From Neoechinorhynchus agilis (lineage: Eukaryota > Animalia > Acanthocephala), in the NCBI GenBank assembly GCA_051530055.1, contig CM121343.1, positions 2,450,389-2,514,388 of the forward strand: a stretch of DNA of 64,000 nucleotides. The letters are read 5' to 3'. Under the pieces are notes generated by a model. It saw only the letters and a list, made by a program, of their open reading frames with translations, ran no database searches and was not told the DNA's origin. Made by a program: the position numbers and the translations under genes. Positions 893 to 58,299 of the stretch are shown here, piece by piece (the stretch's first letter is position 1; each line of letters starts with the position of its first letter).

Positions 893-1218
893 TTGCAAAT
901 TTTTGTCCCAACTGGTCAGCCAATTTCGAAAAATATCAGAAGTCATCCAAGCATTTTTGTTTGCATAGTACTCCACTGGTAATCCCTCCACTCTTAACCC
1001 CTTAAAGCATCGAGGTCTGGCACTTTTTCCTATGACCAGTAGCTTTCGTTCGTCAGTACCTGACATATTTGCGCAGCATAACACAGTAATGCGGTCCATC
1101 GCCTTTTTATAACCAGACAGTGCAATATGTTTATAGCATAAGGAACCGTCTGGCGTAGCACGGTAATAGAGGCCGGTTTCATCAGCATTGTAAATGTCAT
1201 CAGCACAAAAATTCTCTA

Positions 1219-2885: not shown

Positions 2886-4290
2886 TTAGTCTGGATTGAG
2901 TTTCCACTCTTTCACCACAGCTTTAAAGGGTACACGTAAATTAAGTGTGTAGTCCGCTTTGTTATGCGTGGACGTGTTGCCGTGTTCAATCATGATGGCT
3001 TCCATTGTGATTCGATCACGTTTGTTGTCACATCTCGCCATTATTTCAGTGGCATCAAGATCAATTCCATGTTTGTTTTCTTTAACATGATGAACTAATG
3101 CTGAGTTGAGATCGGTCAACTTGCTGATGGCCCGTCTATGTTCGGTCAGCCTTCTTCGGATGTTATTGGTTTGTCAAATAAATGATTGGTCACAATCGTT
3201 ACAGGGTATCCTGTACACACACCCGGAGACCCCGTCAACCCTTCTGGATCGGAACATGCCATCTAAGGTTCCCCCTTTTTTGTTAGAAACCGTCACTTTT
3301 TTTCTGTGAGTCCTGCTGCTTAATGAGATTTTGCATCTTCGTGTTCCACTGATTGTCTACATAAGGGATCTCAATGAATCTTTTTTGGACTGCCTCGTTA
3401 TTCCGATTGTTCAATTTTATATATTGAGTACTTCTCATCGTTTTTTCACTGAGACCCCCCGGATAACCACCAACTTTCAGCAATCTCCAAATTGTGTCAA
3501 GTTCATTCTCAAGAACATCTTCATTCGAGCAATATCTGTATGCTCTCAAGAACATGGACCTCATTCTGGAGATTTTATATTTCGTCAATTGCACTGATCT
3601 CCAAGGGACGACGTTATGTGGAACTATCTCTTTTCGATACACTGCAGTTGTGAAACCACCATCCAAATTTCTATTGATCATCACGTCGAGGAAGGGTAAA
3701 CTCTTGTCGATCTCCTCTTCGCATGTCCATTTGATATGCTGGTTCATCCCGTTAAGCTCTCTGTTCAACTCCGATATAGTAGAAAGTTTGGTGTTGAGGA
3801 TAATGAACGTGTCGTCGACATATCTAACCCATAGCTCAACTCCCTTCAATTTCGACAGGTGTGTTTCCTCCCAGTACCTCATATAGAGTTCTGCTAATAA
3901 TGGGGAAAGGGGGCTACCCATCGCAAGTCCATCTATTTGATCGAAATTCGTGCCTTCGAATTCGAAGTTTGAGAACTTAGTGCAGAAAAGCAGTAATTGA
4001 CGCCACCCGTTGTTAGACAGCTTCCATTCTTTGCAATTCTTCAACAGTAAAATGGCTAGTTCAATCACCTCTTCAACTGGAACCTTCGTGAACAACGATA
4101 TGACATCCGCAGACACCATTTTGCAGGAGTCATTGATATTCACTTTTTTCAGTCGATTAATCAGAACAACCCCTGATGAAACAGCATGGATGGACGGGAG
4201 AAGGAATCGTTTCAGGAGACCGGATAGAAACTTGGACAGTTTGTAGTTGTACGAAGAGTGAGCAGCTATGATCGGCCGTGCTCTAATTTC
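2886..4290 (-). mobile_element. Penelope-like element: RT plus GIY-YIG endonuclease, 5'-truncated and frameshifted
   Basis: RT motifs MVSADVISLFTKVP, DGLAMGSPLSPLLA, WVRYVDDTF and SLPFLDV; GIY-YIG region VYRIPCNDCDQS...SALVHH...MEAIMI. Confidence 0.93.
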
Positions 4291-15749: not shown

Positions 15750-18700
15750 CTAGATTGCTGACTTGACTCGAACATTGTCTTGGAGTATTTTAGTAATGAA
15801 ACGTATCAGAGTCCAGGACGCGTCCGACATGATAACCAGATATAATTGACTTCCGTTAGTGCTTGATAAATGGTCCTTGAGTGTTCGACCCGTAATCAGC
15901 ACATCATCCAAATAAATCGCGACTCCGGGGATTCCCTCAAGTAGTTCGTCCATGTAACGTTGGAAGATGGCTGGTGCTGAATTGATTCCAAAAGTTCATG
16001 TTGACAGGCAGTTGCAAATATGCGTCTTTTAAATCGAGCCTGGAGTATTGCTCTCCTCCCGCAATTTGGTTCACGTCCTCTTCCCACGTAGGAATAGCAT
16101 AGCTATCGATTGATAGATATGGATAATTTGTGACTCTAAAATCACCGCATATTCTAATATCACCGTTCGGTTTCCTCGCAAGCACTACGCAGCGTTTAGA
16201 TTAATTCGAAAAAAGTATTATTAAAAAACACTAGAACTCTTGGAAAAAGTTTAATATTGGAAACAAACTACAAATCATTTGTAGTGTCCGACATAACTAT
16301 GCTGTTTATTCGACCTCCAACCACGAACACACAGTCCCTTATATACTAATGGCGCCGATCGATATTTGAGAATCATACCGCTGAAACGGCCTACGCTCCT
16401 TTGAACCCCGTCTTGGTAGCGTGATTGGTGGAGTCGCTCTTCCGATATTCTCATCTTCCATTCTTCTCGTCAAGTCACGAGTCTCGGCGTCTAGGTTGGA
16501 TTCCTGTCCGTCCCGCCCTATACTTGACGGTATATCGTTTTGCTTTACAGTAGATTCTTCGCCGACTGACCGATTCCTTAGGTCCGTTGCGTGTCTGCTT
16601 GTTGTTACGCCCTGACTCTCTACATTGTAAGAAGTCCAGACAGTTCGACCTGCAACGGTCCTTCTCTCCATGTATTTAAGCGTGGATCGCCTACCCACAC
16701 CTTGTCCGAAGGAGTTAATACTCTATCTTTGGATCAATCATCGTGTGCCATTTTCTGCTTATTTCTCCTCCTCCTTACAGTCAATCGTAAGTCAGGACGT
16801 ATCCGATCGAAAACTGTTTTCAGACGTCGTCCAAGTAATACCTCTGCTGGTGTTTTCTGGCTTGTATTGTGAGGGGTGTTCCGGTAGCTCAAGAGAAATT
16901 GTTGAATCGATAACGAATTCTTGTAACGGTCACTACTGATCTCCACTCGCCGTTTGAAAGTCCCGATGAACCTCTCTACCAATCCGTTCGTTTGTGGATG
17001 GTATGGAGATGCGCAAATGTGCTTGATCCCATTCGCTGTACAGAATTGTCCGAATTGAGCCAATTGAAAAGGTGGTCCGTTATCGGATGTGATTTCGGCT
17101 GGAACTCGAAATCGTGCAAAAACTGTTCTTAATTTGCTGATCGTTTCGAACGCTGATATTGAACTTATCGGAATGATCTCTGGCCAATGACTGTAGGCAT
17201 CTATAAGCACTAAATAAGGTGTCCACCGATTGGTCCTGCGAAATCTAAGTGAATTCGATTCCACATTTCCTCTGGTACGTCCCATTGGTACACTGGAGCC
17301 TCCGGGGGTACAGATCTCCTGCTTTGACAACTTTTGCACGTTCCAAGCTTATGTTCTATGTCCTCACGGATGTTGGGCCACTAACAGTAGTATCTCGCCA
17401 GATCAGTCATTGCTGAGATTCCTGGGTGTCCCGAATGTAAGACATCTAGTGCTTTGCTTTTTAATGAATGAGGTATTACTAGACGCTGCAACCATAGGAT
17501 TACTCCGTCCTCTAACAATAATTCGTGTCTCCGAGAGGAATATTGGCTTAACTTTCGAGGTACGGTCGACGGCCATCCAATCACTAAGTAACGTTCCTTT
17601 TCTTTTTCTCCCAATGCTCGACCTCTGACTTGATCCAGGTGTATCCGCATCTTGCGTTTACCATCGTCCACTAGATACATTCTCCCCCTATTCGTTCGAG
17701 GATAACATCTGCTCTCCATCCTTTTGCCAGCTCATTCTGGGTCCAAACAGCTTCTCCGGCGTTAAATTCTCTGTTTCGTGATGCCCGATCATGTACCGCA
17801 CTCCTTTCCTCTATTTTAGCTCGTTCCTTGTTTCTTTCCTCCAGCTTCAATCTATCCAACACCGTTTCTAATCTTCTTTTTAGGAATAACTCTGACGGTG
17901 TTTTCCCTGTTGAACCGTGCTCCGTGTTACGGTAGCTCAACAAGAAATTTGCTAGACGTTTATTGAGATTTCCTTCGTTCCGCGATAAGGCTCTGTCTTT
18001 TAACGTCCTAATAAAACGTTCGGCGAGGCCGTTCGCTTCTGGATGATATGAACTTCCCATTTTCTGCACCACCCCATTTGCTTTACAGAAATCACCAAAT
18101 TCATTCGACGTGAATTGTGCACCATTGTCTGAAATGATTACTCTGGGCACTCAATTTCTCACGAATACTTCTCGCAGCCTGTTAATCACAGCAAGAGATG
18201 TTATCTTGTCCATACTGAGAACCTCTGGCCACTTCGAGTAGGCATCTACCACCACTAACCACATTTTGCTTTGACTTTGACCCGCTAGATCAATGTATAT
18301 CCTATCCCACGGTCTGCTAGAAAGTGGCCATGTACCTGGTACCGCTTTTGTTATGGCAGGTCTACATTCCTGGCATTGCTGGCATAATCCCACGATTTTT
18401 TTAAGATCTGCGTCGATTCCAGGCCACCATACGTGATACTTCATTCCTGATATCCCAGAGTGACCGGTGTAATCCGGAAATCTCCATAAAATCGGATTTT
18501 ACCATCTGATTTCGCAATCGCTACAATCGGCGTCGCCCATTCAATACTTTCTTTCATCGGATCTACCCCCTTCAGAATTCCTTCGCTCAGCAACTTATCG
18601 ATTTCCTCTTGGCGATATCTCTAATACCGTAAAGTATTCTGCGACTTCCGTATATTTTAGGTATAGCTTCTTCTTTTAGGATCAGAGAAGCTGTAAATCC

Positions 18701-22841: not shown

Positions 22842-23485
22842 GTGCCTGAGACCCCTCAGATCACCACTGGTTCTATTTCGATACCTGATATCGCGCGGCT
22901 TCTGCCCAGGAACGTGCTGAAACGGATCCCTAAAGGCGCGCGATATCTGGCCGCCAAAGCATTTACGGGATTGCTCAGAGATTGCCTTCAAAAGAACTGT
23001 GCGCCATCATGGGCATTGCTTTTCGCTTTCCCGTGCATAGTCCTCTGCACCAGCGGTGATTCTGGGGTGTCTTTGACATCAACAATCAAGGAAGGGCTAG
23101 CCTCCTTTGAACAAATATTTAACGATTTTGAAAGGAATCTCCACGGAAGAGTTTCGCTGCCGCTTTTCAAAGCGATCACTGACTGAACGTGTCTCTTCGA
23201 AGCTTGCGGACGGAGATGTTCGGGGGGCTTTTCGGTTATTGTCATCCTCCGACAGTTTCGCAAAGGGAGACAGCGAGACGCTACAAATACTTCGGTCGAA
23301 GCACCCATGCAGTAGTGGCAGTTTTTAAATTCCATCTCCTCCAATACAAGACAGGACGCCCACTCAAATTTCAGAGTTACAAAAGGCCATCTCATCTTTT
23401 CCAAATGGTTCGGGTCACGGGCTTGACGGACTAAGGCCTAAACACCTAAAGGACATGATATCCTTTTCAACTGGTGAAGCAGCCC
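22842..23485 (+). mobile_element. CRE-like non-LTR retrotransposon, N-terminal/pre-RT fragment
   Basis: VLKRIPKGAR...VSSKLADGDVRGAFRLLSS...LRSKHP...AISSFPNGSGHGLDGLRPKHLKDM. Confidence 0.85.
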
Positions 23486-24391: not shown

Positions 24392-25891
24392 TTAATCTTC
24401 ATTTGTTATATCCTGAAGCTCCGATATTTGCTCGTCTTTTGGCTTCCTCCGGATCCTACTAAACGTTTCTCTCGCACATTGTCCAAGCCCCTTCATATCA
24501 GAAAGTTCAGAACTCGTATGGTATTTTGTCTCAGGTAAAAAAATTATCAGTATAGCAACAAAAAGTGCAAATCCTCCAATCGAGAGCATAGTTACTAGTC
24601 TTTGAGAAGTTAGTTGATCTTTCAAGAAAGGACTTAAAGCTGTTATGATTTCAGCGAAAAAAAGGCAAATCCAAACCCGAATTGTCTATACTTCGTTGGA
24701 AATAGTTCTGATACGAACATCCAAACGATGTCAGAATTAGCTGCAGCAGACAACTTTGCGATGTGATTGAAGACATTCAAAGCTGCTTTATTGCCTGAAG
24801 GAAGGACAGCAAATATTATAGATATAAGCACAAGCAAAAGATTGGTGAAAATACTTCGTTTCCCGTCCGAAGAATTTCATTGCGATGCCACATGAAACAA
24901 ACTGTGGAATTTCGACAACAGCTGTTATAAAGAAATGGAGATAGACGTTGGACGAAAATGCGGACGCTGATAGAGTAAATCCGAAATAACCAAAAGTAGC
25001 CAATGACATTATGAGACATCCACAAAACAACGAGTATGGAAACACAATTGACGAAAACATTGCTCTTAAGTTTTTCTTTATCCGATTTAGCAGCGTTACA
25101 CGAGTTTGGGCCTCTGAATCATCGACGATTAGTCCGATATCGTCTTCAAGTGAAAAAAACTTTTGATCTTGTGGTTTCGTTGAGTTCATTTTATATGCTT
25201 CGGTTAATATTTTATTTACATCAGCTCGTCGTTTATGAACAGCTAGCCAAAATAAACTTTCTCTCATAATCCAATAATAGAGTACAGTGACTGCGACTGG
25301 AACATAAACTGTCAAATAAAGATTCCACCATCCTCTAACAAAATAAGCGACTAAATCCAAGATCAACATTCCTATACCCCAAATGAAATTGGCCATTATA
25401 CACGGGGTGCCTCGGTATTCCGCTGCAAAGACTTCAACAGTGAGAATATAAGAAGAGAGACCACACATCTGCCAGCAAATTCCAGATAAAAAACGGAATA
25501 CTATAAATAAATATCAAGATGATTCCGATCAATAAAAAATATATAATGATTTTATCTGATCGGATGCATCCGATTTAGATGGTATTTGAAATTGCACAGC
25601 CGATTCCGCACATGATTTATATCCAAGCCCCGAGAAGAGCAATTGGATTCTACCAAAGTTGTCGCCAAACATTGACAAAACGGCTGCCCCAATTACTGAT
25701 CCTATGAAAAAGGCTGGCTGTGGAATATCCTTTAAGAATTCCCGATCGCAGCATAGATCAAAAGTGAATAATAGCGATCTGTCGTCGGGAAGCGGGTGGA
25801 TGTAGCCGTTAGGACAGGGTATTGTTTTGTTTGACAGTGAATTAAAGTTCTCAAACTTTCCATCTACATTAAGTGAAATCGCGTCGCTCAT
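24392..25891 (-). pseudogene. SLC22/organic cation transporter-like MFS protein, frameshifted (pseudogene or assembly indels)
   Basis: CPNGY...FDLCCDREFL...FFIGSVIGA...GDNFGR; FRFLSG; EVFAAEYRG; RESLFWL; FGRKRS; SELFPTKYRQFG; LPETK. Frames switch at homopolymers near 24862 and 24660 and near 25500-25600. No TM1 is seen. Confidence 0.88.
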
Positions 25892-27515
25892 CGGCCATCA
25901 AATTAATCTAAAAATGTCTATTTTACTTATATTTTTGAAAATAGTAACGTTAAAGTTTTCAATATTTTTTGAATCTCTATCATTCAAAACCTTGTGATCA
26001 TTTTCCTCAATTTTTTACTTTTCGCCTCAATTCTCGTTCTTATACAACTCAAATCCTCCATTAGTAAGGGACATTTATGTTCCGGCATTTGATATAAACC
26101 CTAACCAATGAATTTCCTTTCGCTGTTTCATGATTACATTGAGTGCCATTTAAACATTTATGGCATCATAGACGTATCTTCTTATATTCTTATAATCTGC
26201 CAGCTATTCTCAAATCCACACCGTGGAAATCCCTGATTTTCTGGATCGCAGTAGATTCCAACAAGTTCATCGGCGACTTCACTGTATGTTGTATTGCGTG
26301 GTGCTGAACATGCGTAGTCCGAATGTTTTTTCCCGATATTTTCCAAAATTCATCGCTGGATTCAGTGTGTTCAGCGAACAAAGTACCCCATTGTTCACGA
26401 GTGGAAATGAATGCTGATTCGGTTGAAGATGAAATGATTGAACGTTGCACTGAACGTGGCTTTTGATCGAGGCTGAGCCTTCGAGTAATGACCGACCATC
26501 GATGAGTACGAGTCCATTTTAGGATTGTGGTTCATTTGGCCACTGAACGATGGTGAATAGTTCATGTTGGGTATGGCGGTACGTTTTCCATTGTGCTTAA
26601 ATACTTGGATTTGAAGATTCGAATCAGTAAGAGGAAATGTTGAGATCGTGAAAATAAAGATGGCTGAGTTAGGTGAGGATGCCTCTCAATAGTAAAAGAA
26701 TGAAAACTTACATTGAAATCATTAAAGCATTTCTGCTTCGCAGGATAAAAGCTGCTTTGTATTAATGCTGATTTTTTGACATTTTTAACTTTTTATCGTT
26801 TTTTGCTTAACGAAAAAATGTTAAAATTTGTCCATTGACAACATTTAATTGTTAATTGAGAAGCTATTTCCGTATCGATAACATTTTGTTAAACATACTC
26901 AATCTTTTGAGACATCAAATCATTCACACAATCGCTCTGGATCCCTGAGATGCCGTTTTCGTGTAACGGTCGAAAGGACGGATGAAGCATTCCTTCTCGT
27001 TTTCAGAGCAGATTTTTGTAAAATAAATGCTCCTGATCCCGGATCGCCAGTGATTCGTCTCAATCTCTTAGACAATTCTTTGACCAGGTCCTGCGCCGAA
27101 GTGAGCTCACACTTTCCAGCATTAAGCTCAACGCCCAGTCTCGCAGTCTCCCTAATCTTTCCAGATCTCTCGGTGCGGATATCAGCCTTATGGACGTCAA
27201 GAATGAAGTAAAATGATAAACAGACTCAAGGTATAAACAAATAACTACCATACAAATGAAGATTCTTACTACGAACAATAAATCATTTTAGTAGGCTGCT
27301 ATTATTTTTGTCAGCTCTTCTTCAGTACTAATTTTGATTACCAATTCAACAAAACAATGAAAATAATGCTTCCATTTCAAGTTTGACAATATCTCAGATG
27401 TTTGTACATTTGAAAGACGCCAATTGAGGTCGAATTGACATCGTTCAATTTCGGTGCAGTAAAACTAAAACCATACTTTGGAATTGTCTTTAAAGTGCAA
27501 GGGAACGAATCAAAA

Positions 27516-29444
27516 ATGGCGATCAAGCGAACATCAAATGCTAAGGAGAAATCACTCGCTCAAATTTGTGATGAATTGAGAGATAATCTCGACGGTGATT
27601 CTTGTACAATCAACCAATCTTTGGCCAAACGCAACCTGCGAGAATTGTTAACGCGATCGATTACAGCCGAGGAAATCTTAAACTTTGGGATGCTTGAGAT
27701 AGTAGACGAAATGACCCTAGACAAAGATTGCAAAAGTACAAGTTGGTTCCTAAGTAAATTAAAGAACAAATTCAAAAAGATAGTCGGTGAAAAATATTGT
27801 CCAAGGATGAAAACGACAAAGACATTGGTCAGTACGACCTCAACTCGAAAACGAACAAACAAAGATGAAATAATGGCGAAAAAGAAGACAGATTCAAGCG
27901 ATAAAGGACGAACGATTTATGAAAAGTCAACGTCCCAATCATTAAATATGCTAATTAAAAAGGTTAAAATTGGATTGGACCCACAGTTTAAAGTTACAAA
28001 CAAGAGCTTAGTAACAAGTGTCTTTTCTGAGATTCTCAAACAAGAAATGACCATCTCTCAGATTAATAAGTCCGGCCTAATAAAGATTCTCCACCAAATG
28101 AATCAAAACAGAGAAAACGGAGAACTTGACCATTTGATTAAAGAAGTGGCAGCAAAAATTAAAGTAGTGCTTGGCATGGAAAAAGGTAAAAATGCCAATG
28201 ATAAATCTCATAGGATGTCCGGTATCCACTCAAAGTTCGATGCTGAGATTGAAGAGCAGTGTCCGATAGAAACGAAATCCAAATCCAGTTTTGAAGACAC
28301 GAGCTGTAAAGAAATTTCAAGGAAGAGGCTGTCATCAACCATTCAAGGTGAAGAGAAAACAAAAATTCAGCGGACAGATTCAACACATCTCCGTCAAAGA
28401 ATCTTGATGACTATGAACTCTGAACACGAAATTGTTAATTCTGATTTATTAAGGAGCATCTTTGATGAAATTCTGAAGGGCGAAGTTAGCCTGAGTGAAA
28501 TTCGTCAATCCGGATTGATAGATGTTCTTGGAGAGATGCTCGACAACAAGGATAATGCTCCACTCAAGAAACTCTTAATCCAAGTTGCTATGAAGGTCAA
28601 GGAGGCTTTCAATCAAACACGATCTAAAGAACGACGAGCCACGAAACCCAAATTGAATAAACCAATAGAAGTAGAAGCCGAATTATCAGATACTGATACT
28701 AGTTATCGGGATTCTAACGCAATTTCGGAAAAGAGAACAGAATCGCCGAGGAGAATCAATAGCGATGGAGAAATAGAAACGGGACATAACAACGTTGAAA
28801 ACGTTCACAGTCAACAGATTTCAGAATCCAAACAATTGATGCCGTCTTCTCGTTTAACCAAGAAGATTAAATTACTAAAGTTTTTATTGGATTCACAATA
28901 CGCAACCAAAAGCCTAGAACTGGTGGACGATGTCCTTTCCGAGATTTCAGAATTAGAGATGACTGTGGATGAAATCAAAGATTCCGATCTTATAACTATT
29001 CTCCATAAGATGGCCAGCAACGAGGAAAACGAACCGTTAATCGACATCATTGAAAAAATCGGAAAAAAGATCGCGGGAATCTTTAATCGGCAACCTACGG
29101 AAATGTCCAATATTTCGATCGAAAATAAATCAGGGTCACAATTGAAGGACAAATCACTGAATGAATCGATTTCAAAAAGAAAATCAAAGCCTTCAATTGA
29201 AATGAACTTGAGCATCAAGGAACTCTGCGATCGTTTAAAAAGCATCTTGGACGAGAAGTTCACTGTTCGGAACCACGCGATGCTAAAGCGGATACTCAGC
29301 GCGATGATTAAACGTGAAATAGCGCTAAGTGAAATTCGGAATAACAATTTGGTGAACATCCTAAGTCAAGTTCGTTCGAATCACTTAAATATTCGGCACA
29401 AAGGACAGCTTGAAAAATTGCTGAAAAAAATAAATGGCGGCTGA
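27516..29444 (+). CDS. Intronless protein (642 aa from ATG 27516) with five ~75-aa helical repeats resembling the TFIIS N-terminal (TND/LW) domain
   Basis: The ORF is certain from the track. Internal repeats such as SEILKQEMTISQINKSGLIKILHQM, DEILKGEVSLSEIRQSGLIDVLGEM and SEISELEMTVDEIKDSDLITILHKM are visible. The domain call is by resemblance only. Confidence 0.75.
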   Translation: MAIKRTSNAKEKSLAQICDELRDNLDGDSCTINQSLAKRNLRELLTRSITAEEILNFGMLEIVDEMTLDKDCKSTSWFLSKLKNKFKKIVGEKYCPRMKTTKTLVSTTSTRKRTNKDEIMAKKKTDSSDKGRTIYEKSTSQSLNMLIKKVKIGLDPQFKVTNKSLVTSVFSEILKQEMTISQINKSGLIKILHQMNQNRENGELDHLIKEVAAKIKVVLGMEKGKNANDKSHRMSGIHSKFDAEIEEQCPIETKSKSSFEDTSCKEISRKRLSSTIQGEEKTKIQRTDSTHLRQRILMTMNSEHEIVNSDLLRSIFDEILKGEVSLSEIRQSGLIDVLGEMLDNKDNAPLKKLLIQVAMKVKEAFNQTRSKERRATKPKLNKPIEVEAELSDTDTSYRDSNAISEKRTESPRRINSDGEIETGHNNVENVHSQQISESKQLMPSSRLTKKIKLLKFLLDSQYATKSLELVDDVLSEISELEMTVDEIKDSDLITILHKMASNEENEPLIDIIEKIGKKIAGIFNRQPTEMSNISIENKSGSQLKDKSLNESISKRKSKPSIEMNLSIKELCDRLKSILDEKFTVRNHAMLKRILSAMIKREIALSEIRNNNLVNILSQVRSNHLNIRHKGQLEKLLKKINGG

Positions 29445-30226
29445 TATTATCAATCATCACTGATTTTACCCATGTTTAAGAGACGATTGACCTAGGATAA
29501 AATATTGTTCATGATATTCAAGGAGCTTTTGGTCGTAGTCGCAACTATCTACGCATTCTCATGATGAATAAGAATAAATTATTATGATAGATCAAAGAAT
29601 GAAAAAATTTGTGTTTCAGAAAGCCTTTCATTTCCAAAATTCTTGATGAATTCTAAACGATAAATGGAATTTAAGAATATAATTTTTCACATCCAATATG
29701 TTTGCAAGTTTCATTGGGGAATTGATTTAGAGCTTGAAAATATCGAAGATATTTGTGGCTAAAAACAATATCACATGGAAATAAAAGCTATCAAAATTCT
29801 CAGGATTCACAGTTATCAACCGGCTACTTTTAATGAGTCTGAAATCAAATTACAAAGTAACAAATAATTCTATGACTAAAAATGTTTTTTAGATATTCTA
29901 AATGAAAAAATGCCTGAGTGAATTTCAATAAGCCGAATTTCTTAACGCCTTTGCTGAAAATTTCATTTGCGATAATATCGCTTTCGGTCTTGGAATAAAA
30001 AATCGAGTTGAAATCGAAATCAAACAGAAGTTCCGCAGTTTTATTACAGAAGATTGCACTTAAATAAGCAATATGAAATGTCAAAGAAGAATGAATTTCA
30101 AAAGAAATTGCTGAGAAAAAGATTTATTAAAACTTAAAAGGCAAAGAACACGTCATTTGCAAAATGTTGATAATTGAGGTACCGGGGACAATGATTGGAA
30201 TTATTGTTTAATTCTTCACCCATTAA

Positions 30227-30603
30227 AAGACCGTCGTGGTAGATCTCGAGTTTTTCTTCGTCCAAGACTCAATGCTTTCCATTTTATACGTTTTTCTCTA
30301 AAAAGATGAGTTTGCTGGAAAAAGCTTATATTTTATTGAAGTCGTCGCCCAGTAAAGAATTTCTCATTAAAGACTTTATCGGGTAAGACCGTAGTGGTCG
30401 ACCTCCAGTTTTTCTTCGTCCAGGACTCAATGTTCGCTATTTTATACGTTTTTCTCTAAAAAGATGAGTTTGCTGGAAAACGCATATATTTTATTGAAGT
30501 CCTCATCCGGTAAAGAATTTCTTATTAAAGACGCTATCGGGTAAGACCGTTGTGGTAGATCTCGAGTTTTTCTTCGTCCAGGACTCAATGTTCGCTATTT
30601 TAT
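30227..30603. repeat. Tandem repeat, ~2.4 x 158 bp
   Basis: AAGACCGT recurs at 30227, 30385 and 30543. Confidence 0.93.
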
Positions 30604-30625
30604 AAATTCTCTTAACATTTGAAAA

Positions 30626-32389
30626 AAATTATCAATCTCTCTTCAAAGCTACGAATCCAAAAAACATGAAAAAGATTTAATAATGTAACGAAAATGTAAT
30701 TCAGACCTTTAAGAAAGTACGAGGAGATAATGGTAATTTATGCGTTAGAGATCAGCCAATCAATCAGCTGTGAAAAAATTGCGTGTCGGATATTTTATTA
30801 CCGATCGATTAATAATATAAAACTTTTGATAATACTAAAACACTGCTCACAAATGCACTTTTTGTACCGAGTGAAAAAAATTAAATTTCGCAAAATGATC
30901 CGGTCCAAAAAAACTGAAGCAATCCGAGAAAACGCCGATGAATGCGACAATCCTCCACTTTGAAACGGATTATCCTTATTTTTTACCAATTGCCCTCTGA
31001 GATGCAATCGCATCCTTCGTCGTCATCGGGCTTTGGCCTTTCGCCAATACTCACTGTTTGCAAGTTTTTTCAACTGCGAATGGGGATTAACCCTCAACGA
31101 CACTCTTGTTTTGTCCTTGTTCTTTTATACCAGAACGAAACTTCCTGGGTAAGTACGTAACGGAAATACGTTTATGATTGTCTAAAACAATTTTTAAGTT
31201 TTATTTTTCAACCTTTTCGGCTTTCCTGGACTTCAAAATCATTCATCGCACTGATGAAAGCATTTAGAATTTCTCGACGAAATCGATTGGTCATTTACAA
31301 ATCGAAGTAGAAATGAGAAAACACCGCTTAGTAGAGACTTCGCTCCGTCCTTAAACTCAATGATTTAACTAATTCATCTTTCAGACTTCTTCAGAGTGGA
31401 AAACCAAGATATTGAGATGTTTCTTTGAAGGATCTTCATTGGAGGAAGTTTGAGTAAAGATTTCAACTATACAGCATTTTCGTCTCGCTTTAGCCTATTA
31501 ATCAATCTTCATTCAAACGAAAAAAATTTAAATTCAAAGTTGGCTTGGTTTGCCGGCATTTAACGTAGTTTATTTTAGAAGTATTTAGGAAATTAATCCT
31601 CAGAGCCCTGAACATAGAAGAAATCCGGTGGGCCGTCGGATGCATTGTGCGCCCAAGTACCTCATCGTTGGCAAATTATTAGGCTGAAATCAATTAATGA
31701 GGATTTCATTTGGGGAAATGTTGCCCAGTGGGATTTCTGCACACAACAAAGTTTTTCGGCCACGCCCAAGTGAGATGAACAGTCGAATTGGGCCTTTGAA
31801 GATATTCAATGGGTAATGCGCCAATTTCCTCATAACTTTTTCTGAAATAATCCGCATTGAGTTCAAGAAATGGATAAAACACCAAAAATGTTACCCTCTT
31901 CTACTGATCAATGCATTTTATTTTCAAATCTCTAAACATTCAGACGAAAAAGTCTTTTTTCTGAACATCGAAAAAGGTGAGACCATTTTGTGAGACTAAC
32001 TCTTTATTCTGTGTTGAAATGAGGCCTTTTCCAGGGCCGATAATTTGGATTGGACACACAGATCACCGATGTGGTCCAAGGAAGTACATAATTCCATTTA
32101 ATATCTTGGACCATACGGTTTTGAGTATTTAACATTCCTTCGGAATCTCAGATATGTCCAAGAGGCGGGACCATCGGTGGGTTTCCTTCCTTCAGCGGTA
32201 TTTCGTCCCCTTTGGTTCTACGTCATCGGTGCTCCGAAACAGAGATTCGGAGTTCAATTCCATTAGACCGTATGGGCACAATTATGGAATGTACAAACTC
32301 TGCCAGTTTTAATTTTGGACCGATTATTGAATAAATTTATGCTTATTTCTGACTTGCCGATTAAATTTATTCTGTGTTGAAGTAAGGCC
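30626..32389 (+). repeat. Segmental duplication arm A (~1.77 kb), inverted relative to arm B at 56382-58163
   Basis: The reverse complement matches along its length, e.g. the near-identical ORFs at 30730(+) and 57818-58057(-). Confidence 0.95.
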
Positions 32390-41538: not shown

Positions 41539-43929
41539 ATGACCGATGACGATGGCTGGATCGAGGTTGGACCTAAAGGAAAGCCAATATATCCCAAAAA
41601 ATTGAGCGATCCGGAGAAAAAGGTGCTTCGATTCGCTCCCTTACTCGCAAAGCCTGTCTTGGTTACACTAAGAGACGGCGCCGTTGCGATTGGTCGCCTA
41701 TACACGGTTTCGCCAAATCTGGACTTCGCTTTAAGGGACGGAAAGATTACACGGAATGGAATAACGACGGGGTGTCCTGCGTCCAAAACAATGGTAATAC
41801 GGCATGAGAAGTGGGTCAGTATCCGTGCAAAGGAGGAGACAGCAGTAGAAGGGTTCAAAACGGATGCCGTGATTTCTTCTAAGACGTCGAAAGTGGACGA
41901 AGGTGTGGACGATGAGAAGAAGAGTGAATTGGTACCGTTCTTTGACCAAGACGATAATGGAGAAGGCGAAGAGTTGGGCGCTGACGGACCGGAAACCGGG
42001 TGGGATTCGGCGTCCATGATCCGAGCTTTCGACCAGCGCAATCCTGGAAAGACGAGTTACCGTGGTATAGACAATGTCTACACGAACGTAGAAGTTCCGG
42101 TTCTTGATCCAGCTTTGGCTCGACGTGTGGATGAAATGGCTCGACGTACTAGGCCAACTGATGATGAATACGTTGAAGGAAGGGATGAGGAGGCTGCGTT
42201 TGCTAGCGTCGCACGGGTGGACGTTTCCCAATCCACCAGATATGGCAGTGAAAGGAACAGAAGATCTCATCCGTATGGTCAACGAGTTTTCACTCGTCAG
42301 AAGAACCCACAACAAAATCAACAGCAGCAGCAACAACAACAAAATCAGCAGCACCAGCAAAACCAAGTTCCTAATCGAATCAATAGTGGCCGCCAATTTT
42401 CAAGTGGAGGAAAGCAACAGCAGCATTCCATGGTTAGGTACAGTCCTCAAGAACAGTATAACAGAAATCGTGCAGAGAATCCGAGAAATGTATGGATAGG
42501 TAGAGGTCGCGGCAAATATCATGGAAATCAACAAAGGTTTCCGAGACTTCCAATACCTGATAAAAGACCGTCTTCCTCTGATCATGGTACGAGCGAAGTT
42601 AGAAACCGCCTAAGGCCGGTCGTTAATGAGTGGGAATTACGAAAACAAAGATTGGCAGCACAACAGGCGGCCACTGCGCAACTGAATAGACAGGAACCAA
42701 TCGCAGCAACCACCTCTAGTAACTTGAACGATCCAGCTTCTAGCTCAACCCTTGAGACTTCCTCTCAAGTTTCGCCAGTACAACAAGTTTCAGCCGGCGT
42801 TATGACCTCACCAACGAACAAACTTTCAATATCGGAAACAATGATTGTATCTCCCCCAAAGCACTTCATTGCTCGGCCAGCGGATTCAGTGTTTACCAGT
42901 AACAATAATAAGGCCCCTTCGAGCTTGGTCGCATCGACTGAACAGCTCTCGTCCACGGGTGAACAAATCACCAATCACGCTACATCGTCTATTCCCTATG
43001 CTGATGACGTTTCAGTCACACAATCAAACCGATCCGCATCCAGTGATAAGGAAGAAGAGCTGTGGAACGTACTAAACACGGTTGAGGAGTACATTCCAAG
43101 TACAGTTCCTCAAACGTCGTGTGCGAAGGAAATCCCTTTAATGGAATCGGGTTTAGTGGCAACAACAACAACAACAGGAACCGATACAGCACTCAATGCT
43201 ATGAGTCGAGCTTCAGATGCTCCAAATGAAGAGGAAGTATACTATGCCCAACCGGAAGTATCTGAACCCGTTTCTGTGTCTTCGTCGTCTGCAGTACCAG
43301 ATCCAATCTTACAGAATCCATATCTTGTATTTCAACAGCAAGGATTCGGAAACCAAATGCCTTTCGATAGCGTACAACATCAAATGATTGCAACCGCATA
43401 CTTAAACTTTGCCTCAAACGTGCTAACGCAGCATCCATCTATTGCGGCGGCAGCTGCAGCAGCCGCGCCCAATATTGCCTATTTTCAACCTCATGCGGCA
43501 CCAAACTTCAATGCGATCGCCATAGACCCAACTGCTCAATTGTTGACTTTCCTGAATCCACCATTTCAGGTGGCAGCGGCACCGCAACAAGTCCAAGGAC
43601 CACCTCAGCCATTTTACACCCAACCTGGTGGTGCAACGTCATCCGTTGCGCCATTTTCGGCCCAAGACATGCCGTATATTTCACTGTATCCGTTTCCGGC
43701 CGCCAATCAGCACGTGACTGCTCAACCGATCTTTCCATTGCCACCTCCAGCCAGCACCTACGTCCAACGCGTCACCATTCCTCCTCATAATGACCACCGT
43801 GGCGGACGTCCTAACAACTACCGAGGACGTGGCTTTGGTCGAGGAAGGCGTAGTAGCATGAGGGGTAGCTCGCGACGACCAAGCCACACCGCAGAGACAA
43901 ATGCAGGAGGGGACGGACCGCGTGAGTGA
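41539..43929 (+). CDS. ATXN2: Ataxin-2/Pbp1 family RNA-binding protein (796 aa, single exon)
   Basis: Lsm domain (VLVTLRDGAVAIGRLYTVSPNLDFAL), FKTDAVISS, LELVPF-like segment, LsmAD (GWDSASMI...SYRGIDNVYT...RDEEAAFASVAR), polyQ tract, and Pro/Gln/Ala-rich and RGG-like tail. Confidence 0.9.
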   Translation: MTDDDGWIEVGPKGKPIYPKKLSDPEKKVLRFAPLLAKPVLVTLRDGAVAIGRLYTVSPNLDFALRDGKITRNGITTGCPASKTMVIRHEKWVSIRAKEETAVEGFKTDAVISSKTSKVDEGVDDEKKSELVPFFDQDDNGEGEELGADGPETGWDSASMIRAFDQRNPGKTSYRGIDNVYTNVEVPVLDPALARRVDEMARRTRPTDDEYVEGRDEEAAFASVARVDVSQSTRYGSERNRRSHPYGQRVFTRQKNPQQNQQQQQQQQNQQHQQNQVPNRINSGRQFSSGGKQQQHSMVRYSPQEQYNRNRAENPRNVWIGRGRGKYHGNQQRFPRLPIPDKRPSSSDHGTSEVRNRLRPVVNEWELRKQRLAAQQAATAQLNRQEPIAATTSSNLNDPASSSTLETSSQVSPVQQVSAGVMTSPTNKLSISETMIVSPPKHFIARPADSVFTSNNNKAPSSLVASTEQLSSTGEQITNHATSSIPYADDVSVTQSNRSASSDKEEELWNVLNTVEEYIPSTVPQTSCAKEIPLMESGLVATTTTTGTDTALNAMSRASDAPNEEEVYYAQPEVSEPVSVSSSSAVPDPILQNPYLVFQQQGFGNQMPFDSVQHQMIATAYLNFASNVLTQHPSIAAAAAAAAPNIAYFQPHAAPNFNAIAIDPTAQLLTFLNPPFQVAAAPQQVQGPPQPFYTQPGGATSSVAPFSAQDMPYISLYPFPAANQHVTAQPIFPLPPPASTYVQRVTIPPHNDHRGGRPNNYRGRGFGRGRRSSMRGSSRRPSHTAETNAGGDGPRE

Positions 43930-46160: not shown

Positions 46161-47750
46161 TCATCCTTTGGGATGATAGAGTTGAATTTGTGGTGATCGT
46201 AATGCCCCTATCGGAGAATTATGATCATCACAGTTCTATTATTAAATTTAGAAGATTTTCTAGGATTAATACGACGGTCAAACCAAAATGTTTACCTCTT
46301 TGTCGCATTTTTGCTCAGCTTTTGTTATTAGTCTCATTGTACGTGCGAGCTGGATTAGGCGTAATCGTATAAGTTTAGATATTAGATAGAATTTAACGTA
46401 GAATATTCGTTGAAATGCGGTAAACAACAGACCTCCAGGAGGGGACGCGAGAGTAATAACTCTGATCAATTCATCTATAATATTAAATCATTCTAGCAAA
46501 AATGCAAGGATTTTGTATCGTTACTTACCAAATATTGCAATCTCCTTATAAGGCGATTGAAAAAAACGACTGATGGATTTAGGACTGTTTTCAAAATCGT
46601 ACATGTCTTGCATTATGCCAGCTATATCAATATTTTCTTCGCGACTAACCGATTGTAATATGTCAATGCCTCGTTTGTACCATATTCTATTTAAAACTTT
46701 AAGTTTTTATGGGACATAGTTTCTTTACCTCGGCTTGAATAATTCGTCGATAAAGCTCGGTTTGAACCTGTTGTTCTCTGGGCATTTCATAAGTTCATCA
46801 ATCGTTCTAGACTTCGTTAAGGAGAACATTGACTCCTTAGGCTTGTTTCTCGGAGGGGGTTTCATTTTTCCAACAGCAGAATTGTATTCGCTTGTCCTGA
46901 GTGCCAAATGAATCTTATATTTTCTTGCTTTTATATCAAAGAAACTCTGCATCGTTTTAGTTAAACTTTTTAAAAATTCGTCATTGATGTTTTCAATTTT
47001 CTTTCTAGACAATTTCAGCACATACGGCGACCGCAATCGTCGTAATTTTCTCTTTAATACTCTGTGAAATGCTCGTCCTTTGTTGTATTTAAGCAGAAAT
47101 TGTTGCTTTTTTGAAGACCAGTAAAGAATTTCGTCCATTTCAGCATTATCCTTTTTAGATAATATTACATTTGAACAATTTATCGGATACGTACCGCATC
47201 ATTATCGAGGGAACGATACTTTGCAATATGACCGCAAATTCGCTTCCCAGGTAACTTTTAGTGCAAAACAACGATTAAGCTTCATTTACAAAAAAAGTGA
47301 TACTTACGTTATCAGCATCCAAAATTTCAATTTCATCGCCATACTTTAAGTATATCTTCGGATCTAAGAATATGTGATTGCAATGATTATCCAATTCAGT
47401 TCCATTCGGCTCCACTGGTGGATCCTTTGAGCGCAATATCTCCGTATAGTAAAGAAGCCACTTGTCTCTCTAAAGCTTACCTCAAAACTGTCCTCAAACT
47501 GATCTTCTGACGGGTTACACATGTCGTGATAACATAGTGAGTCCTCACTCACGTCCGAATCTGTTGAAGCGAAATCCATTATGGTATCAATCTTGACTTT
47601 TTCGTTGTTCAAAGAAGTTCCCATGGAAACGGTTATGAATTTTCTTGTCACTGCTAAAATTAATCCAACGAATATTCGCTAACTCAACCTTCGTCATTTC
47701 TTCGTAGCCTAGAAGAGCGCACAGACTCCCGGATTGATGTGTAAATATTT
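46161..47750 (-). CDS. Orphan multi-exon gene (at least 8 exons); 5' end unresolved within the 132-bp array
   Basis: Seven GT-AG introns of 35, 56, 53, 44, 42, 54 and 60 nt (47654-47688, 47425-47480, 47255-47307, 47151-47194, 46687-46728, 46475-46528, 46236-46295) link open exons with consistent phases. Stop TGA at 46161-46163; the last acceptor has an alternative. Confidence 0.75.
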
Positions 47751-48496
47751 ACGAAAGTGGTAAAGCCTCCAGATTATTAATTCTATTAAATTCTATTCTT
47801 GTGTCGAATATTCGTTAGCTGAACCTTCGTCATTTCATAAACCGTTATTGCAGCAAACTCTTGGATTGATGTGTAAATATTTACGAAAGTGGTAAAGCCT
47901 CCAGATTATTAATTCTATTAAATTCTATTCTTGTGTCGAATATTCGTTAGCTGAACCTTCGTCATTTCTTAAACCGTTATTGCAGCAAACTCCAGGATTG
48001 ATGTGTAAATATTTACGAAAGTGGTAAAGCCTCCAGATTATTAATTCTATTAAATTCTATTCTTGTGTCGAATATTCGTTAGCTGAACCTTCGTCATTTC
48101 ATAAACCGTTATTGCAGCAAACTCTTGGATTGATGTGTAAATATTTACGAAAGTGGTAAAGCCTCCAGATTATTAATTCTATTAAATTCTATTCTTGTGT
48201 CGAATATTCGTTAGCTGAACCTTCGTCATTTCTTAAACCGTTATTGCAGCAAACTCGGATTGATGTGTAAATATTTACGAAAGTGGTAAAGCCTGTTTTT
48301 TTTTTTTTTGGGTGTTGTGTTTTTTGGGGTGGGAATTCTATTAAATCTATTCTTGTGTCGAATATTCGTTAGCTGAACCTTCGTCATTTCTTAAACCGTT
48401 ATTGCAGCAAACTCTTGGATTGATGTGTAAATATTTACGAAAGTGGTAAAGCCTCCAGATTATTAATTATCTATAATTCCATTCTTGTGGCGAATA
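47669..48496. repeat. Tandem array, ~6 x 132 bp
   Basis: GGATTGATGTGTAAAT occurs at 47731, 47863, 47995, 48127, 48257 and 48417. Confidence 0.96.
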
Positions 48497-50631: not shown

Positions 50632-51872
50632 AACGCGTTTTTAAATAAAACAGGACCATAACTTTGATTTCCGGACACAGAGCTAATCAACCCTACGAAC
50701 TTAAGAATAGATTTGAATTTTTTTAATTCTCCGCAATGAGTGACTCAATTCAACTGCTATAGAAATGTTATACTCGTTTTTACAAAGACGGTCTTATTTT
50801 AGTCCTAAAAAGCTTACAAGGAAATGATTTAGAATAAGTGAAATCACATTCGCAATCGGGATTGATGGACCTTTTCCCGATTGGAATTCATTGGCGTCGC
50901 GAAAACTTTTCTTGAGAAAATCTTTGATGGTAGTCACTAAAATTTTAAACATGATGAACGCGTTTTTAAATAAAACAGGACCATAACTTTGATTTCCGGA
51001 CACAGAGCTAATCAATCCTACGAACTTAAGAATAGATTTGAATTTTTTTAATTCTCCGCAATGAGTGACTCAATTCAACTGCTATAGAAATGTTATACTC
51101 GTTTTTACAAAGACGGTCTTATTTTAGTCCTAAAAAGCTTACAAGGAAATGATTTAGAATAAGTGAAATCACATTCGCAATCGGGATTGATGGACCTTTT
51201 CCCGATTGGAATTCATTGGCGTCGCGAAAACTTTCCTTGAGAAAATCTTTGATTGTAGTCACTAAAATTTTAAACAAGATGAACGCGTTTTTAAATAAAA
51301 CAGGACCATAACTTTGATTTCCGGACACAGAGCTAATCAACCCTACGAACTTAAGAATAGATTTGAATTTTTTTACTTGTCCGCAATGAGTGACTCAATT
51401 CAACTGCTATAGAAATGTTATACTCGTTTTTATAGAGACGGTCTTATTTTAGTCCTAAAAAGCTTACAAGGAAATGATTTAGAATAAGTGAAATCACATT
51501 CGCAATCGGGATTGATGGGCCATTTCCCGATTGGAATTCATTGGCGTCGCGAAAACTTTTCTTGAGAAAATCTTTGATTGTAGTCACTAAAATTTTAAAC
51601 ATGATGAACGCGTTTTTAAATAAAACAGGACCATAACTTTGATTTCCGGACACAGAGCTAATCAACCCTACGAACTTAAGAATAGATTTGAATTTTTTAA
51701 TTCTCCGCAATGAGTGACTCAATTCAACTGCTATAGAAATGTTATACTCGTTTTTATAAAGACGGTCTTATTTTAGTCCTAAAAAGCTTACAAGGAAATG
51801 ATTTAGAATAAGTGAAATCACATTCGCAATCGGGATTGATGGACCTTTTCCCGATTGGAATTCATTGGCGTC
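50632..51872. repeat. Tandem array, ~3.8 x 325 bp, directly upstream of dlg
   Basis: AACGCGTTTTTAAATAAAACAGGACC recurs at 50632 and 50957 and at the same spacing after that; repeated ORFs end at 50794, 51119, 51444 and 51768. Confidence 0.97.
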
Positions 51873-52008
51873 TCTAAAACTGAGAAAATCTCCAAACTTT
51901 TTCATGATGGCAATCATCACACCGTTCGATTGTGTGATCGGAAAGAATCGTAAGACGCTATAGGGATCTCGCACGTGTGACTTTCGTTTTAGACAGAGAG
52001 ATTGGCTA

Positions 52009-58163: not shown

Positions 58164-58299
58164 ATTTCTTCATAAAATCATTAGCTTTTCTCGTATTATT
58201 TTGAATGTTTCTGGAGCTGAAATATTTTATTTGGCGGAGAAGGAAGGATGAAATGATTTCGAATTAAAATTTATTTAACAAAATGGGGTTTTGGTGTAT

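What the first reader, a model, noticed from the sequence alone, without database searches (positions are those of the whole stretch)
27516..29444. Orphan protein built from five tandem TFIIS-N-like helical domains
Five ~75-aa repeats share the pattern L..LD..F.V.N..L...I.SEI.K.E.T..EI..S.LI.IL..M..N.EN..L..LI..V..KI and are separated by S/K/E-rich linkers. The pattern recalls the TFIIS N-terminal domain (L..L..L.MT.D.L..T.IG..V..L). Known TND proteins (TFIIS, Elongin A, MED26, IWS1, LEDGF, PNUTS) carry a single copy that binds TND-interacting motifs. A pentameric array could be a multivalent scaffold or decoy for elongation-factor interactions. The ORF is intact and intronless amid decayed DNA.
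Basis: partly seen in the sequence, partly recalled or inferred. Interest (0 to 1): 0.7.

Follow-up and report, generated by a model that had tools for sequence, protein, structure and literature searches.

The report
Five-TND-domain protein, amplified worm family
The ORF is a real gene of the thorny-headed worm Neoechinorhynchus agilis, encoding five MED26-like TFIIS-N-terminal (TND) helical bundles strung on disordered linkers; this architecture is not described elsewhere, and the gene belongs to a species-restricted, recently amplified family.

Summary
Observation confirmed. Window 27516-29444 (+) is an intact 642-aa ORF with five ~80-aa repeats. Pairwise alignment z-scores are 3-19 against shuffles. 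The linkers are disordered, basic and Ser/Thr-rich.

The TND reading holds. A profile of the repeats and their divergent paralogues hits the human MED26 TND at E=7e-8. An AlphaFold model of repeat 2 (pLDDT 93.5) is a five-helix bundle. 29 of its 31 best PDB fold matches are TND-fold domains; MED26 scores TM 0.85 at 1.8 Å.

It is not a lone orphan. The window is from Neoechinorhynchus agilis (Acanthocephala, 46-Mb genome). About 14 near-identical gene models (89-98%) exist, plus fragments and roughly 10 divergent gene models with 1-4 TNDs. None was found outside this species among 1.84 billion representative proteins, although P. laevis and bdelloid rotifer proteins are in the underlying collection.

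The copies spread as ~5-6.5-kb segmental duplicons that carry pieces of a neighbouring SLC22 transporter gene. No transposon hallmarks were found. dN/dS is 0.18-0.44 in the domains and 0.42-0.80 in the linkers, so the protein is under constraint.

The proposed function, a multivalent nuclear reader of TIM-like disordered motifs, is inferred and untested. The MED26 docking residues R61/K62 are not conserved. Verdict: new variant of a known kind.

The parts
27516..29444 (+). Intact 642-aa ORF (stop included) encoding the penta-TND protein; equals P0004, CM121343.1:2477904-2479832
27549..27794 (+). TND repeat 1 (aa 12-93), the most divergent; net charge 0
   Evidence: helices 14-26, 34-46, 51-56, 59-68, 73-90
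27936..28181 (+). TND repeat 2 (aa 141-222); modelled alone at pLDDT 93.5; MED26-like loop motif GLDPQFKVTN
28380..28619 (+). TND repeat 3 (aa 289-368)
28851..29093 (+). TND repeat 4 (aa 446-526), acidic (net -4); carries the weak Pfam Med26 hit (aa 472-507)
29208..29441 (+). TND repeat 5 (aa 565-642), basic (net +9); ends the protein
27795..27935 (+). Linker 1 (aa 94-140), disordered, basic, 34% Ser/Thr, contains RKRTNK and KKK
28182..28379 (+). Linker 2 (aa 223-288), disordered; acidic/hydrophobic patch SKFDAEIEEQCPIE
28620..28850 (+). Linker 3 (aa 369-445), disordered; IEVEAELSDTDTSYRD with CK2-type sites
29094..29207 (+). Linker 4 (aa 527-564), disordered; KRKSK basic cluster
27398..27416 (+). 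Upstream ATG-TTT plus the 13-nt GT..AG segment that the 678-aa paralogue models treat as an intron; probable annotation artefact
25375..31900 (.). Approximate ~6.5-kb duplicon shared with the L001 and L005 copies: 5' end of the SLC22 gene, intergenic region, TND gene, 158-bp satellite and repX. The L002 and L003 copies start further left (25167, 24162) and end near 30230
24392..25891 (-). Divergently oriented SLC22/OCT-like transporter gene; different lengths of it are carried along with different copies of the TND gene
30227..30604 (.). 158-bp satellite (2.4 copies here, about 6 in the neighbouring copy L005) directly 3' of the gene unit
30621..32389 (.). Non-coding repeat 'repX'. It also occurs at 56382-58168 (-) and 63692-64000 (-), and upstream of the L001 and L005 copies; part of the duplicon

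Best explanation
The ORF is a functional gene of Neoechinorhynchus agilis. Its product is probably nuclear.

Shown:
- The protein consists of five TFIIS-N-terminal-domain (TND) five-helix bundles, closest to the MED26 TND.
- The bundles are joined as beads on a string by 38-77-aa disordered, Ser/Thr-rich, mostly basic linkers.
- It belongs to a species-restricted TND family that diversified into members with 1-5 TNDs.
- The five-TND subfamily was recently amplified to about 14 copies by segmental (local, inverted and dispersed) duplication.
- Purifying selection is concentrated on the bundles.

Inferred:
- Each bundle acts as TNDs do elsewhere, as a non-catalytic reader of short disordered TIM-like motifs (helix plus acidic stretch).
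- Five non-identical readers on flexible tethers would then form a multivalent hub. It could bridge several motif-bearing transcription or chromatin factors, or sequester them.
- Positional orthology is preserved across subfamilies, and the bundles differ in charge (-4 to +9). Both suggest that each position has its own ligand.
- The MED26 docking pair R61/K62 is not conserved, so the ligands are unlikely to be simply those of MED26.
For: Repeats are real.

TND homology:
- Profile against PDB sequences: MED26 TND (6zv3, 5odd) at E=1.2e-3 with the window-type repeats.
- This rises to E=7.2e-8 (35.6 bits, 70 gapless columns) once divergent paralogue domains are added. PNUTS and TFIIS TNDs appear among the weaker hits.
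- AF2 of repeat 2: pLDDT 93.5, pTM 0.81, five helices.
- Foldseek against PDB: 29 of the best 31 hits are TND-fold domains, and MED26 TND scores TMq 0.85 at rmsd 1.8 Å.
- No comparable match in the viral library, which serves as a specificity control.
- The full-length model shows five equivalent 5-helix bundles at pLDDT 70-88 and linkers below 50, with pTM 0.25.

Family:
- Only N. agilis proteins match among 1.84e9 representatives. P. laevis and bdelloid rotifer proteins are present in the protein collection from which those representatives are drawn.
- About 14 near-identical gene models on at least 5 contigs.
- Repeat order is conserved in the 36-50%-identical subfamilies.

Selection: dN/dS is 0.32-0.57 overall, 0.18-0.44 in domains and 0.42-0.80 in linkers, at dS 0.05-0.11.

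Duplication mode: copies carry variable pieces of the adjacent SLC22 gene, and L001 and L005 share a junction at window 25375 preceded by repX.

TND properties (five-helix bundle, reader of TIMs, single copy in the described proteins): PMC9987994.

Nuclear location is inferred only from basic clusters (RKRTNK, KRKSK) and the absence of an evident N-terminal signal sequence.
Against: - No binding, localisation or expression data were available.
- Single repeats fall below Pfam's PF08711 threshold.
- Foldseek E-values are weak (0.06-1) because the domain is short.
- The AF2 alignment consisted only of the repeats themselves.
- The MED26 residues needed for docking SEC (R61/K62, PMC13634412) align with TL, NQ, LD, AS and RS in R1-R5.
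- Three of the five bundles are neutral or acidic, unlike the basic TIM-binding face described for TNDs.
- No FxGF motif occurs in the protein.
- Some copies are decaying: L003 has two frameshifts, and there are fragment models P0020, P0021 and P0032.
- Copies are so recent (dS 0.05-0.11) that the dN/dS estimates rest on only 20-68 substitutions per class.
Confidence: 0.6

Rival explanations
1. The bundles have the TND fold, but the protein does something other than read TIM-type motifs of the Pol II elongation machinery. It might bind other peptides, nucleic acid or chromatin, or serve a germline or embryo-specific structural role. The TND ancestry would then say little about function.
For: - The MED26 docking residues are not conserved.
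- Bundle net charges run from -4 to +9.
- No partner information exists.
- The family is species-restricted and evolves fast: paralogue subfamilies are only 25-50% identical.
Against: - Every characterised TND acts as a reader of disordered motifs and none has another activity (PMC9987994).
- Lysines in helix 5 (the K-x-K of AAKIKVV, AMKVKEA, GKKIAG, LKKIN) are conserved where MED26 has KRAKKLLR.
- The hydrophobic core pattern is kept.
Confidence: 0.22
2. The gene is a passenger or product of a mobile element. The ~5-6.5-kb unit would be a transposon (or be moved by one), and the ORF's many copies would reflect transposition, not host function.
For: - About 14 copies at 89-98% identity on at least 5 contigs.
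- The unit is flanked by other repeats. repX lies in direct orientation on both sides of the L005 copy, and a 158-bp satellite follows the gene.
- Transposon debris lies elsewhere in the window.
Against: - The unit contains no transposase, reverse transcriptase or integrase.
- No terminal inverted or long terminal repeats bound it in the window.
- The left edges differ between copies (24162, 25167, 25375), and they cut through a host SLC22 gene that is more complete in the window copy.
- Copies cluster locally, including an inverted neighbour 36 kb away, as segmental duplication would produce.
- Divergent subfamilies with conserved repeat order sit in unrelated gene neighbourhoods.
- dN/dS is below 1.
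Confidence: 0.08
3. The copies are young, functionless duplicates (or mis-annotated ORFs) that are intact only because too little time has passed for them to decay.
For: - dS between copies is only 0.05-0.11.
- One of four sequenced copies already has two frameshifts.
- Several truncated or chimeric gene models exist (P0003, P0010, P0012, P0020, P0021).
- The 678-aa models contain a 13-nt 'intron'.
- No expression evidence was obtained.
Against: - Synonymous changes outnumber replacement changes per site 2-5 fold in the bundles but less so in the linkers, which is the pattern of a constrained folded protein.
- Much older paralogues (36-50% identity) still keep open frames, the same domain order and a confidently foldable domain.
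Confidence: 0.1

Closest known systems
MED26 N-terminal domain (TND; PDB 6zv3, 5odd; Pfam PF08711 Med26/TFIIS helical bundle-like)
   Same: - Best sequence match (profile E=7.2e-8 over 70 gapless columns).
- Best fold match by TM-score (0.85, rmsd 1.8 Å, 20% identity).
- Same five-helix order.
- Shared loop motif: MED26 AIDPQSNIRN against GLDPQFKVTN in repeat 2.
- Basic residues in helix 5.
   Different: - MED26 has one TND plus a C-terminal Mediator-binding domain. This protein has five TNDs and no such domain (no Med26_M/Med26_C Pfam hit).
- The docking residues R61/K62 are replaced.
- Repeats are 15-24% identical to MED26, and single repeats miss the Pfam threshold.
Other single-TND transcription factors: TFIIS/TCEA domain I (LW domain), IWS1/Spn1, LEDGF/HRP2 IBD, PNUTS/PPP1R10, Elongin A
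   Same: Same fold. All of these except Elongin A appear in the Foldseek list at TMq 0.53-0.74. They share the general logic of a non-catalytic reader of disordered TIMs (PMC9987994).
   Different: - The described proteins carry one TND each, combined with other functional domains (zinc ribbon, PWWP, PP1-binding and so on).
- Here the TND is the only folded module, and it is repeated five times.
- No FxGF-type ligand pocket evidence was obtained.
Proteins with several TIMs in series (IWS1, SPT6, LEO1, JPO2)
   Same: Multivalency within the TND:TIM network builds higher-order assemblies (PMC9987994).
   Different: In those proteins the ligand motif is multiplied. Here the reader domain is multiplied, which is the mirror-image arrangement and was not found in the literature searched.

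Membership tests
TND fold family (PROSITE PS51319 / Pfam PF08711) | [quoted passage not shown] | tested here: met
   - AF2 of repeat 2: pLDDT 93.5, helices 3-12, 23-35, 40-46, 48-57, 59-78.
- All five repeats show the same five-helix pattern in the full-length model.
- 29 of the best 31 Foldseek PDB hits are TND-fold domains.
TND fold family (PROSITE PS51319 / Pfam PF08711) | Statistically significant sequence similarity to a bona fide TND | tested here: met
   The family profile A3 hits the MED26 TND at E=7.2e-8 among 177,635 PDB sequences. With the window-type repeats only (A2), E=1.2e-3.
TND fold family (PROSITE PS51319 / Pfam PF08711) | Reaches the curated Pfam gathering score of PF08711 (20.6 bits) | tested here: not met
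   - Whole protein: 12.5 bits, E=0.14.
- Single repeats: no PF08711 hit listed.
- Best paralogue, P0017: 16.2 bits.
The domains are too divergent for the current Pfam model.
TND fold family (PROSITE PS51319 / Pfam PF08711) | TIM-binding surface: two shallow hydrophobic pockets with a patch of 3-5 basic residues between them | tested here: inconclusive
   - Helix-5 lysines are conserved (K74 is invariant among the repeats).
- The MED26 R61/K62 positions are TL, NQ, LD, AS and RS.
- Net charge of the bundles is 0, +4, -2, -4 and +9.
- No surface analysis of the model coordinates was possible with these tools.
TND fold family (PROSITE PS51319 / Pfam PF08711) | Binds disordered TND-interacting motifs of transcription regulators | not testable with these tools
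   Needs co-folding with N. agilis partner sequences or a binding assay.
MED26 orthologue (Mediator subunit 26) | Single N-terminal TND plus a C-terminal domain that docks on Mediator (MED4/7) | tested here: not met
   There are five TNDs and the protein ends with the fifth. No Med26_M or Med26_C hit in Pfam. phmmer against PDB does not find full-length MED26.
Transposable-element-encoded protein | Lies in a unit with fixed termini (TIR or LTR, target-site duplication) and/or next to transposase, RT or integrase genes | tested here: not met
   - No terminal repeats around the unit.
- No TE enzyme domains between 24.1 and 32.4 kb.
- Copy edges differ and cut a host SLC22 gene.

The most novel reading that the evidence does not exclude
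In an acanthocephalan with a drastically reduced 46-Mb genome, the TND reader module has been turned into a new class of multivalent hub: five position-specific TNDs on flexible tethers, amplified to about 14 copies. This hub would rewire or buffer the TND:TIM network controlling Pol II elongation. It might replace lost single-TND factors, nucleate condensates, or act as a decoy against retroelements that exploit TND proteins for integration, as lentiviral integrase exploits the LEDGF IBD.
Probability: 0.2. Interest if true: 0.75.

Novelty: new variant of a known kind. Interest (0 to 1): 0.55.

Why it matters
TNDs are described as the fold most enriched among transcription-elongation regulators. 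In the proteins described so far they occur singly, and multivalency comes from multiplied ligand motifs (PMC9987994).

A natural protein made only of five distinct TNDs would be a ready-made model for how reader multivalency organises disordered-motif networks. It would also supply five diverged TND surfaces for specificity studies. Its explosive, species-restricted amplification in a compact parasite genome points to strong dosage or conflict-driven selection.

Practically, the family is missed by Pfam and annotated as 'hypothetical protein'. The profile built here could seed a new family model.

Tried and rejected
- Pfam on the whole protein and on single repeats: nothing above threshold. 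The marginal hits (F-box-like_2, Symplekin_C, DUF3689 and others) are inconsistent between repeats and were rejected as noise.
- phmmer of the whole protein against PDB: only a marginal hit to the N-terminus of vaccinia Rpo30, the TFIIS-related polymerase subunit (E=0.097). Suggestive, not used as evidence.
- Foldseek with the full-length model: generic ARM/HEAT solenoids at TM 0.1-0.2 and rmsd about 20 Å. This is an artefact of a low-confidence global model (pTM 0.25) and was rejected.
- Foldseek of repeat 2 against viral structures: no credible match.
- Word-indexed search with the domain profile: only two N. agilis fragments, so not informative.
- P0025 and P0027 from the exhaustive search are low-complexity or repetitive false positives, with per-domain scores of 1-13 bits.
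- P0023 as a possible true MED26 orthologue: no support from PDB or Pfam.
- AGO/Piwi-TND fusion suggested by model P0017: rejected. The AGO reading frame runs on to its own stop (...LYFC*), and the TND gene starts about 350 bp downstream with its own Met.
- Retrogene origin (intronless copy of an intron-bearing parent): rejected. The divergent P0016 locus is also uninterrupted across the TND region.
- Supplementary tables of the N. agilis transcriptome paper: no usable entry for the family or for canonical TND genes.
Full report
**1. What is in the sequence**

The window holds an uninterrupted reading frame at 27435-29444 (+). Its first ATG is at 27516, giving a 642-aa product. That exact protein is on record in the public protein collection (P0004). 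It maps to Neoechinorhynchus agilis assembly GCA_051530055.1, contig CM121343.1:2477904-2479832. The window is therefore from an acanthocephalan, a thorny-headed worm that parasitises fish. Its genome is only 46.2 Mb with 13,655 predicted genes (PMC12690905).

The protein contains five ~80-aa repeats at aa 12-93, 141-222, 289-368, 446-526 and 565-642. They align without internal gaps at 18-38% identity. Pairwise local alignment scores exceed composition-matched shuffles, with z-scores from 3.2 (R1-R4) to 18.7 (R2-R4).

The four linkers are 38-77 aa long, 22-34% Ser/Thr and strongly hydrophilic. Three are basic and one (L3) is about neutral. They contain clusters such as RKRTNK and KRKSK.

**2. 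What the repeats are**

Single-sequence searches are nearly blind:
- Pfam gives only a sub-threshold Med26/TFIIS hit in repeat 4 (12.5 bits, E=0.14).
- PDB gives only a marginal hit to the TFIIS-related vaccinia Rpo30 N-terminus.

Profiles resolve the matter. An HMM of the window-type repeats finds the human MED26 TND (6zv3, 5odd) as the best PDB sequence at E=1.2e-3, with PNUTS TNDs further down. Adding the diverged domains of paralogues (alignment A3, 18 domains) raises the MED26 match to E=7.2e-8 (35.6 bits) over 70 gapless columns. PNUTS and TFIIS are again in the tail.

AlphaFold2 was run on repeat 2, using only the repeats as its alignment. It gives a five-helix bundle at pLDDT 93.5 and pTM 0.81. 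Foldseek against the PDB returns TND-fold domains for 29 of its first 31 matches:
- LEDGF IBD
- MED26 TND (TMq 0.85, rmsd 1.8 Å, 20% identity)
- IWS1/Spn1
- TFIIS and trypanosome LW domains

PNUTS follows at ranks 41 and 47. The probabilities for the leading matches are close to 1, although the E-values are weak (0.06-1), as expected for an 80-residue query. The same model finds nothing credible among viral structures, which serves as a specificity control.

In the full-length model all five repeats adopt the same five-helix pattern (pLDDT 70-88). The linkers (aa 93-140, 223-289, 368-443, 526-560) are below 50 and pTM is 0.25. This means beads on a string with no fixed inter-domain packing. 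Foldseek with that global model only returns solenoid noise.

The TND is defined as a five-helix, non-catalytic reader of disordered TND-interacting motifs (TIMs). In the proteins described it occurs once per protein (PMC9987994). I found no paper describing tandem TND arrays.

**3. Not an orphan: a species-restricted, amplified family**

The word-indexed search found only N. agilis paralogues at 85-96% identity. Their 90% clusters hold 15 members, the window's own product included, on at least five contigs. One member is an unrelated LRR fragment, P0014.

An exhaustive HMMER search of 1.84 billion representative proteins with the repeat profile found 13 hits at E≤1e-3. All the credible ones that were looked up are from N. 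agilis. Their domain counts come:
- P0016: 4 TNDs
- P0017: 3 TNDs
- P0018 and P0028: 2 TNDs each
- P0019: 2 TNDs
- P0023, P0024 and the P0026 group: 1 TND each

P0022 is a short fragment whose source was not looked up. P0025 and P0027 are repetitive false positives.

As a control, the Dlg gene in the window retrieves orthologues from Pomphorhynchus laevis (42% identity) and many bdelloid rotifers. Those proteomes are therefore in the protein collection from which the representatives are drawn, and the family's absence there is meaningful at HMMER sensitivity.

Repeat order is conserved between subfamilies. P0016 d1-d4 pair with R1-R4, P0017 with R1, R2 and R5, and P0019 with R4 and R5. The five-domain array therefore predates the subfamily splits, and each position has kept its identity.

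**4. How the copies spread, and the TE question**

DNA comparison of the window with four other copies shows a shared unit of about 5-6.5 kb, far wider than the ORF.

Upstream, on the opposite strand, lies an SLC22/OCT-type transporter gene at 24392-25891. Its best PDB match is SLC22A1 at E=2e-14. Different copies of the unit carry different lengths of it, with left edges at window 24162, 25167 or 25375.

Two copies (L001, L005) share the 25375 edge. Each is preceded by a non-coding repeat (repX) that in the window lies just downstream of the gene, at 30621-32389. This is what a junction of tandemly duplicated ~6.5-kb segments would look like.

The closest copy (P0006, 98.3%) lies inverted only about 36 kb away, just beyond the window's end. 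Locus tags of other copies are clustered.

The unit contains no transposase, RT or integrase, no TIRs or LTRs, and no coding capacity in repX. I therefore favour segmental duplication over transposition and give the TE rival 0.08.

**5. Is it maintained by selection?**

Among four copies, dS is 0.05-0.11. dN/dS is 0.32-0.57 overall, 0.18-0.44 in the bundles and 0.42-0.80 in the linkers. That is the signature of a constrained folded protein.

Decay does occur. The L003 copy has two 1-bp frameshifts, and several truncated or chimeric models exist.

The 678-aa models of paralogues rely on a 13-nt GT..AG 'intron' after an upstream ATG-TTT. The same sequence is in the window at 27398-27416. A 13-nt intron is implausible, so the 642-aa reading is preferred.

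**6. How it most likely works (inference)**

By analogy with every characterised TND, each bundle should read a short helical and acidic motif in a disordered partner. Five different readers on flexible tethers would make a multivalent hub or sponge. The tethers are possibly phospho-regulated: Ser/Thr-rich, with many S/T-x-x-D/E sites. Basic clusters and the absence of an evident N-terminal signal sequence suggest a nuclear protein.

There are cautions. A gapless HMM alignment places the MED26 docking pair R61/K62 opposite TL, NQ, LD, AS and RS in R1-R5. Mutation of that pair abolishes SEC binding (PMC13634412). The bundles range from net -4 to +9, and there is no FxGF motif.

The ligands are therefore probably not simply MED26's, and a non-TIM function cannot be excluded (rival at 0.22). 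Conserved features shared with MED26 include the loop motif (AIDPQSNIRN against GLDPQFKVTN) and the helix-5 lysines.

**7. Comparison, novelty and score**

It is a member of the TND fold family by fold and by profile statistics, though below the Pfam threshold. It is not a MED26 orthologue: there is no Mediator-binding C-terminal domain, and there are five TNDs.

The tandem five-TND architecture and the species-restricted amplification are new as far as the searched literature and databases show. The verdict is 'new variant of a known kind'.

Interest is 0.55. The structural finding is solid and unusual. It offers a natural multivalent reader for a network of current interest. The function is still conjecture, and the organism is not experimentally tractable.

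Noticed in passing
window 24392-25891 (-): SLC22/OCT-like transporter gene, split over four ORFs (introns or frameshifts), divergently oriented to the TND gene. The annotated model (331 aa) lacks the 25529-25891 part. Truncated pieces of this gene travel with the TND duplicons.
   Followed up: partly
window 26107-27268: A 1.16-kb segment in the SLC22-TND intergenic region is absent from the L001 copy (L001 9871/9872 are adjacent) but present in L002 and L005. L003 instead lacks 27022-27397. The nature of this segment (insertion or deletion, possible small TE) was not determined.
   Followed up: no
window 27398-27416: The gene models of paralogues (678 aa) start at an upstream ATG-TTT and skip a 13-nt GT..AG 'intron'. 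The window has the same sequence. A 13-nt intron is implausible, so this is probably an annotation artefact.
   Followed up: partly
window 30227-30604; L005 12147-13069: A 158-bp satellite lies directly 3' of the TND unit. It has 2.4 copies in the window and about 6 in the neighbouring inverted copy.
   Followed up: partly
window 30621-32389, 56382-58168 (-), 63692-64000 (-); L001 7797-8972: Non-coding dispersed repeat 'repX' (at least 1.8 kb, 91-96% identity) that accompanies the TND duplicons. It has no ORF over 80 aa and was not classified.
   Followed up: partly
L007 1-900 (contig JBMGUZ010000028.1): A three-TND paralogue (P0017) lies about 350 bp downstream of the 3' end of an Argonaute gene (SHAGIQGTSRPTRY ... 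PAPCYYAHHVAFRAR ... LYFC*). The gene model wrongly fuses the two. The AGO frame also shows an in-frame stop or intron.
   Followed up: partly
L002 13082-14172; L006 13427-16287; P0012, P0014: An LRR-containing gene lies downstream of several family members. In L006 the neighbour also has weak prenyltransferase alpha (PPTA) repeat hits, so my guess, not tested, is a Rab geranylgeranyltransferase alpha-like gene. One model (P0012) chimerically joins the TND gene to the LRR fragment.
   Followed up: no
P0024 (ACOME3_002643, 904 aa): A single-TND paralogue whose TND (aa 703-779) is preceded by about eight near-identical ~90-aa tandem repeats rich in K, E, S and P.
   Followed up: no
window 41539-43929 (+): The largest ORF in the window (796 aa) has no Pfam hit at E≤0.01. 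It has a poly-Q/N stretch, a long low-complexity middle and an RG-rich C-terminus. It sits in the GC-richest part of the window (0.49).
   Followed up: no
window 52009-54609 (+): Dlg-type MAGUK gene (L27, three PDZ domains, SH3; guanylate kinase in a second ORF at 54046-54609, so an intron or frameshift separates them). The best orthologue is from Pomphorhynchus laevis (42% identity), followed by bdelloid rotifers.
   Followed up: partly
window 698-1609 (-), 3283-4143 (-), 16734-17339 (-), 22842-23434 (+): Transposon debris: a pogo/Tc5-type DDE transposase fragment, a reverse-transcriptase fragment and an integrase core fragment. An ORF at 22842-23186 carries a ...RIPKGAR... motif also seen in the N-terminus of the chimeric model P0019.
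   Followed up: no
window 47731-48294 and 50632-51881: Two further tandem arrays: 132 bp x 4.3 copies and 325 bp x 3.8 copies, both at 97% matches.
   Followed up: no
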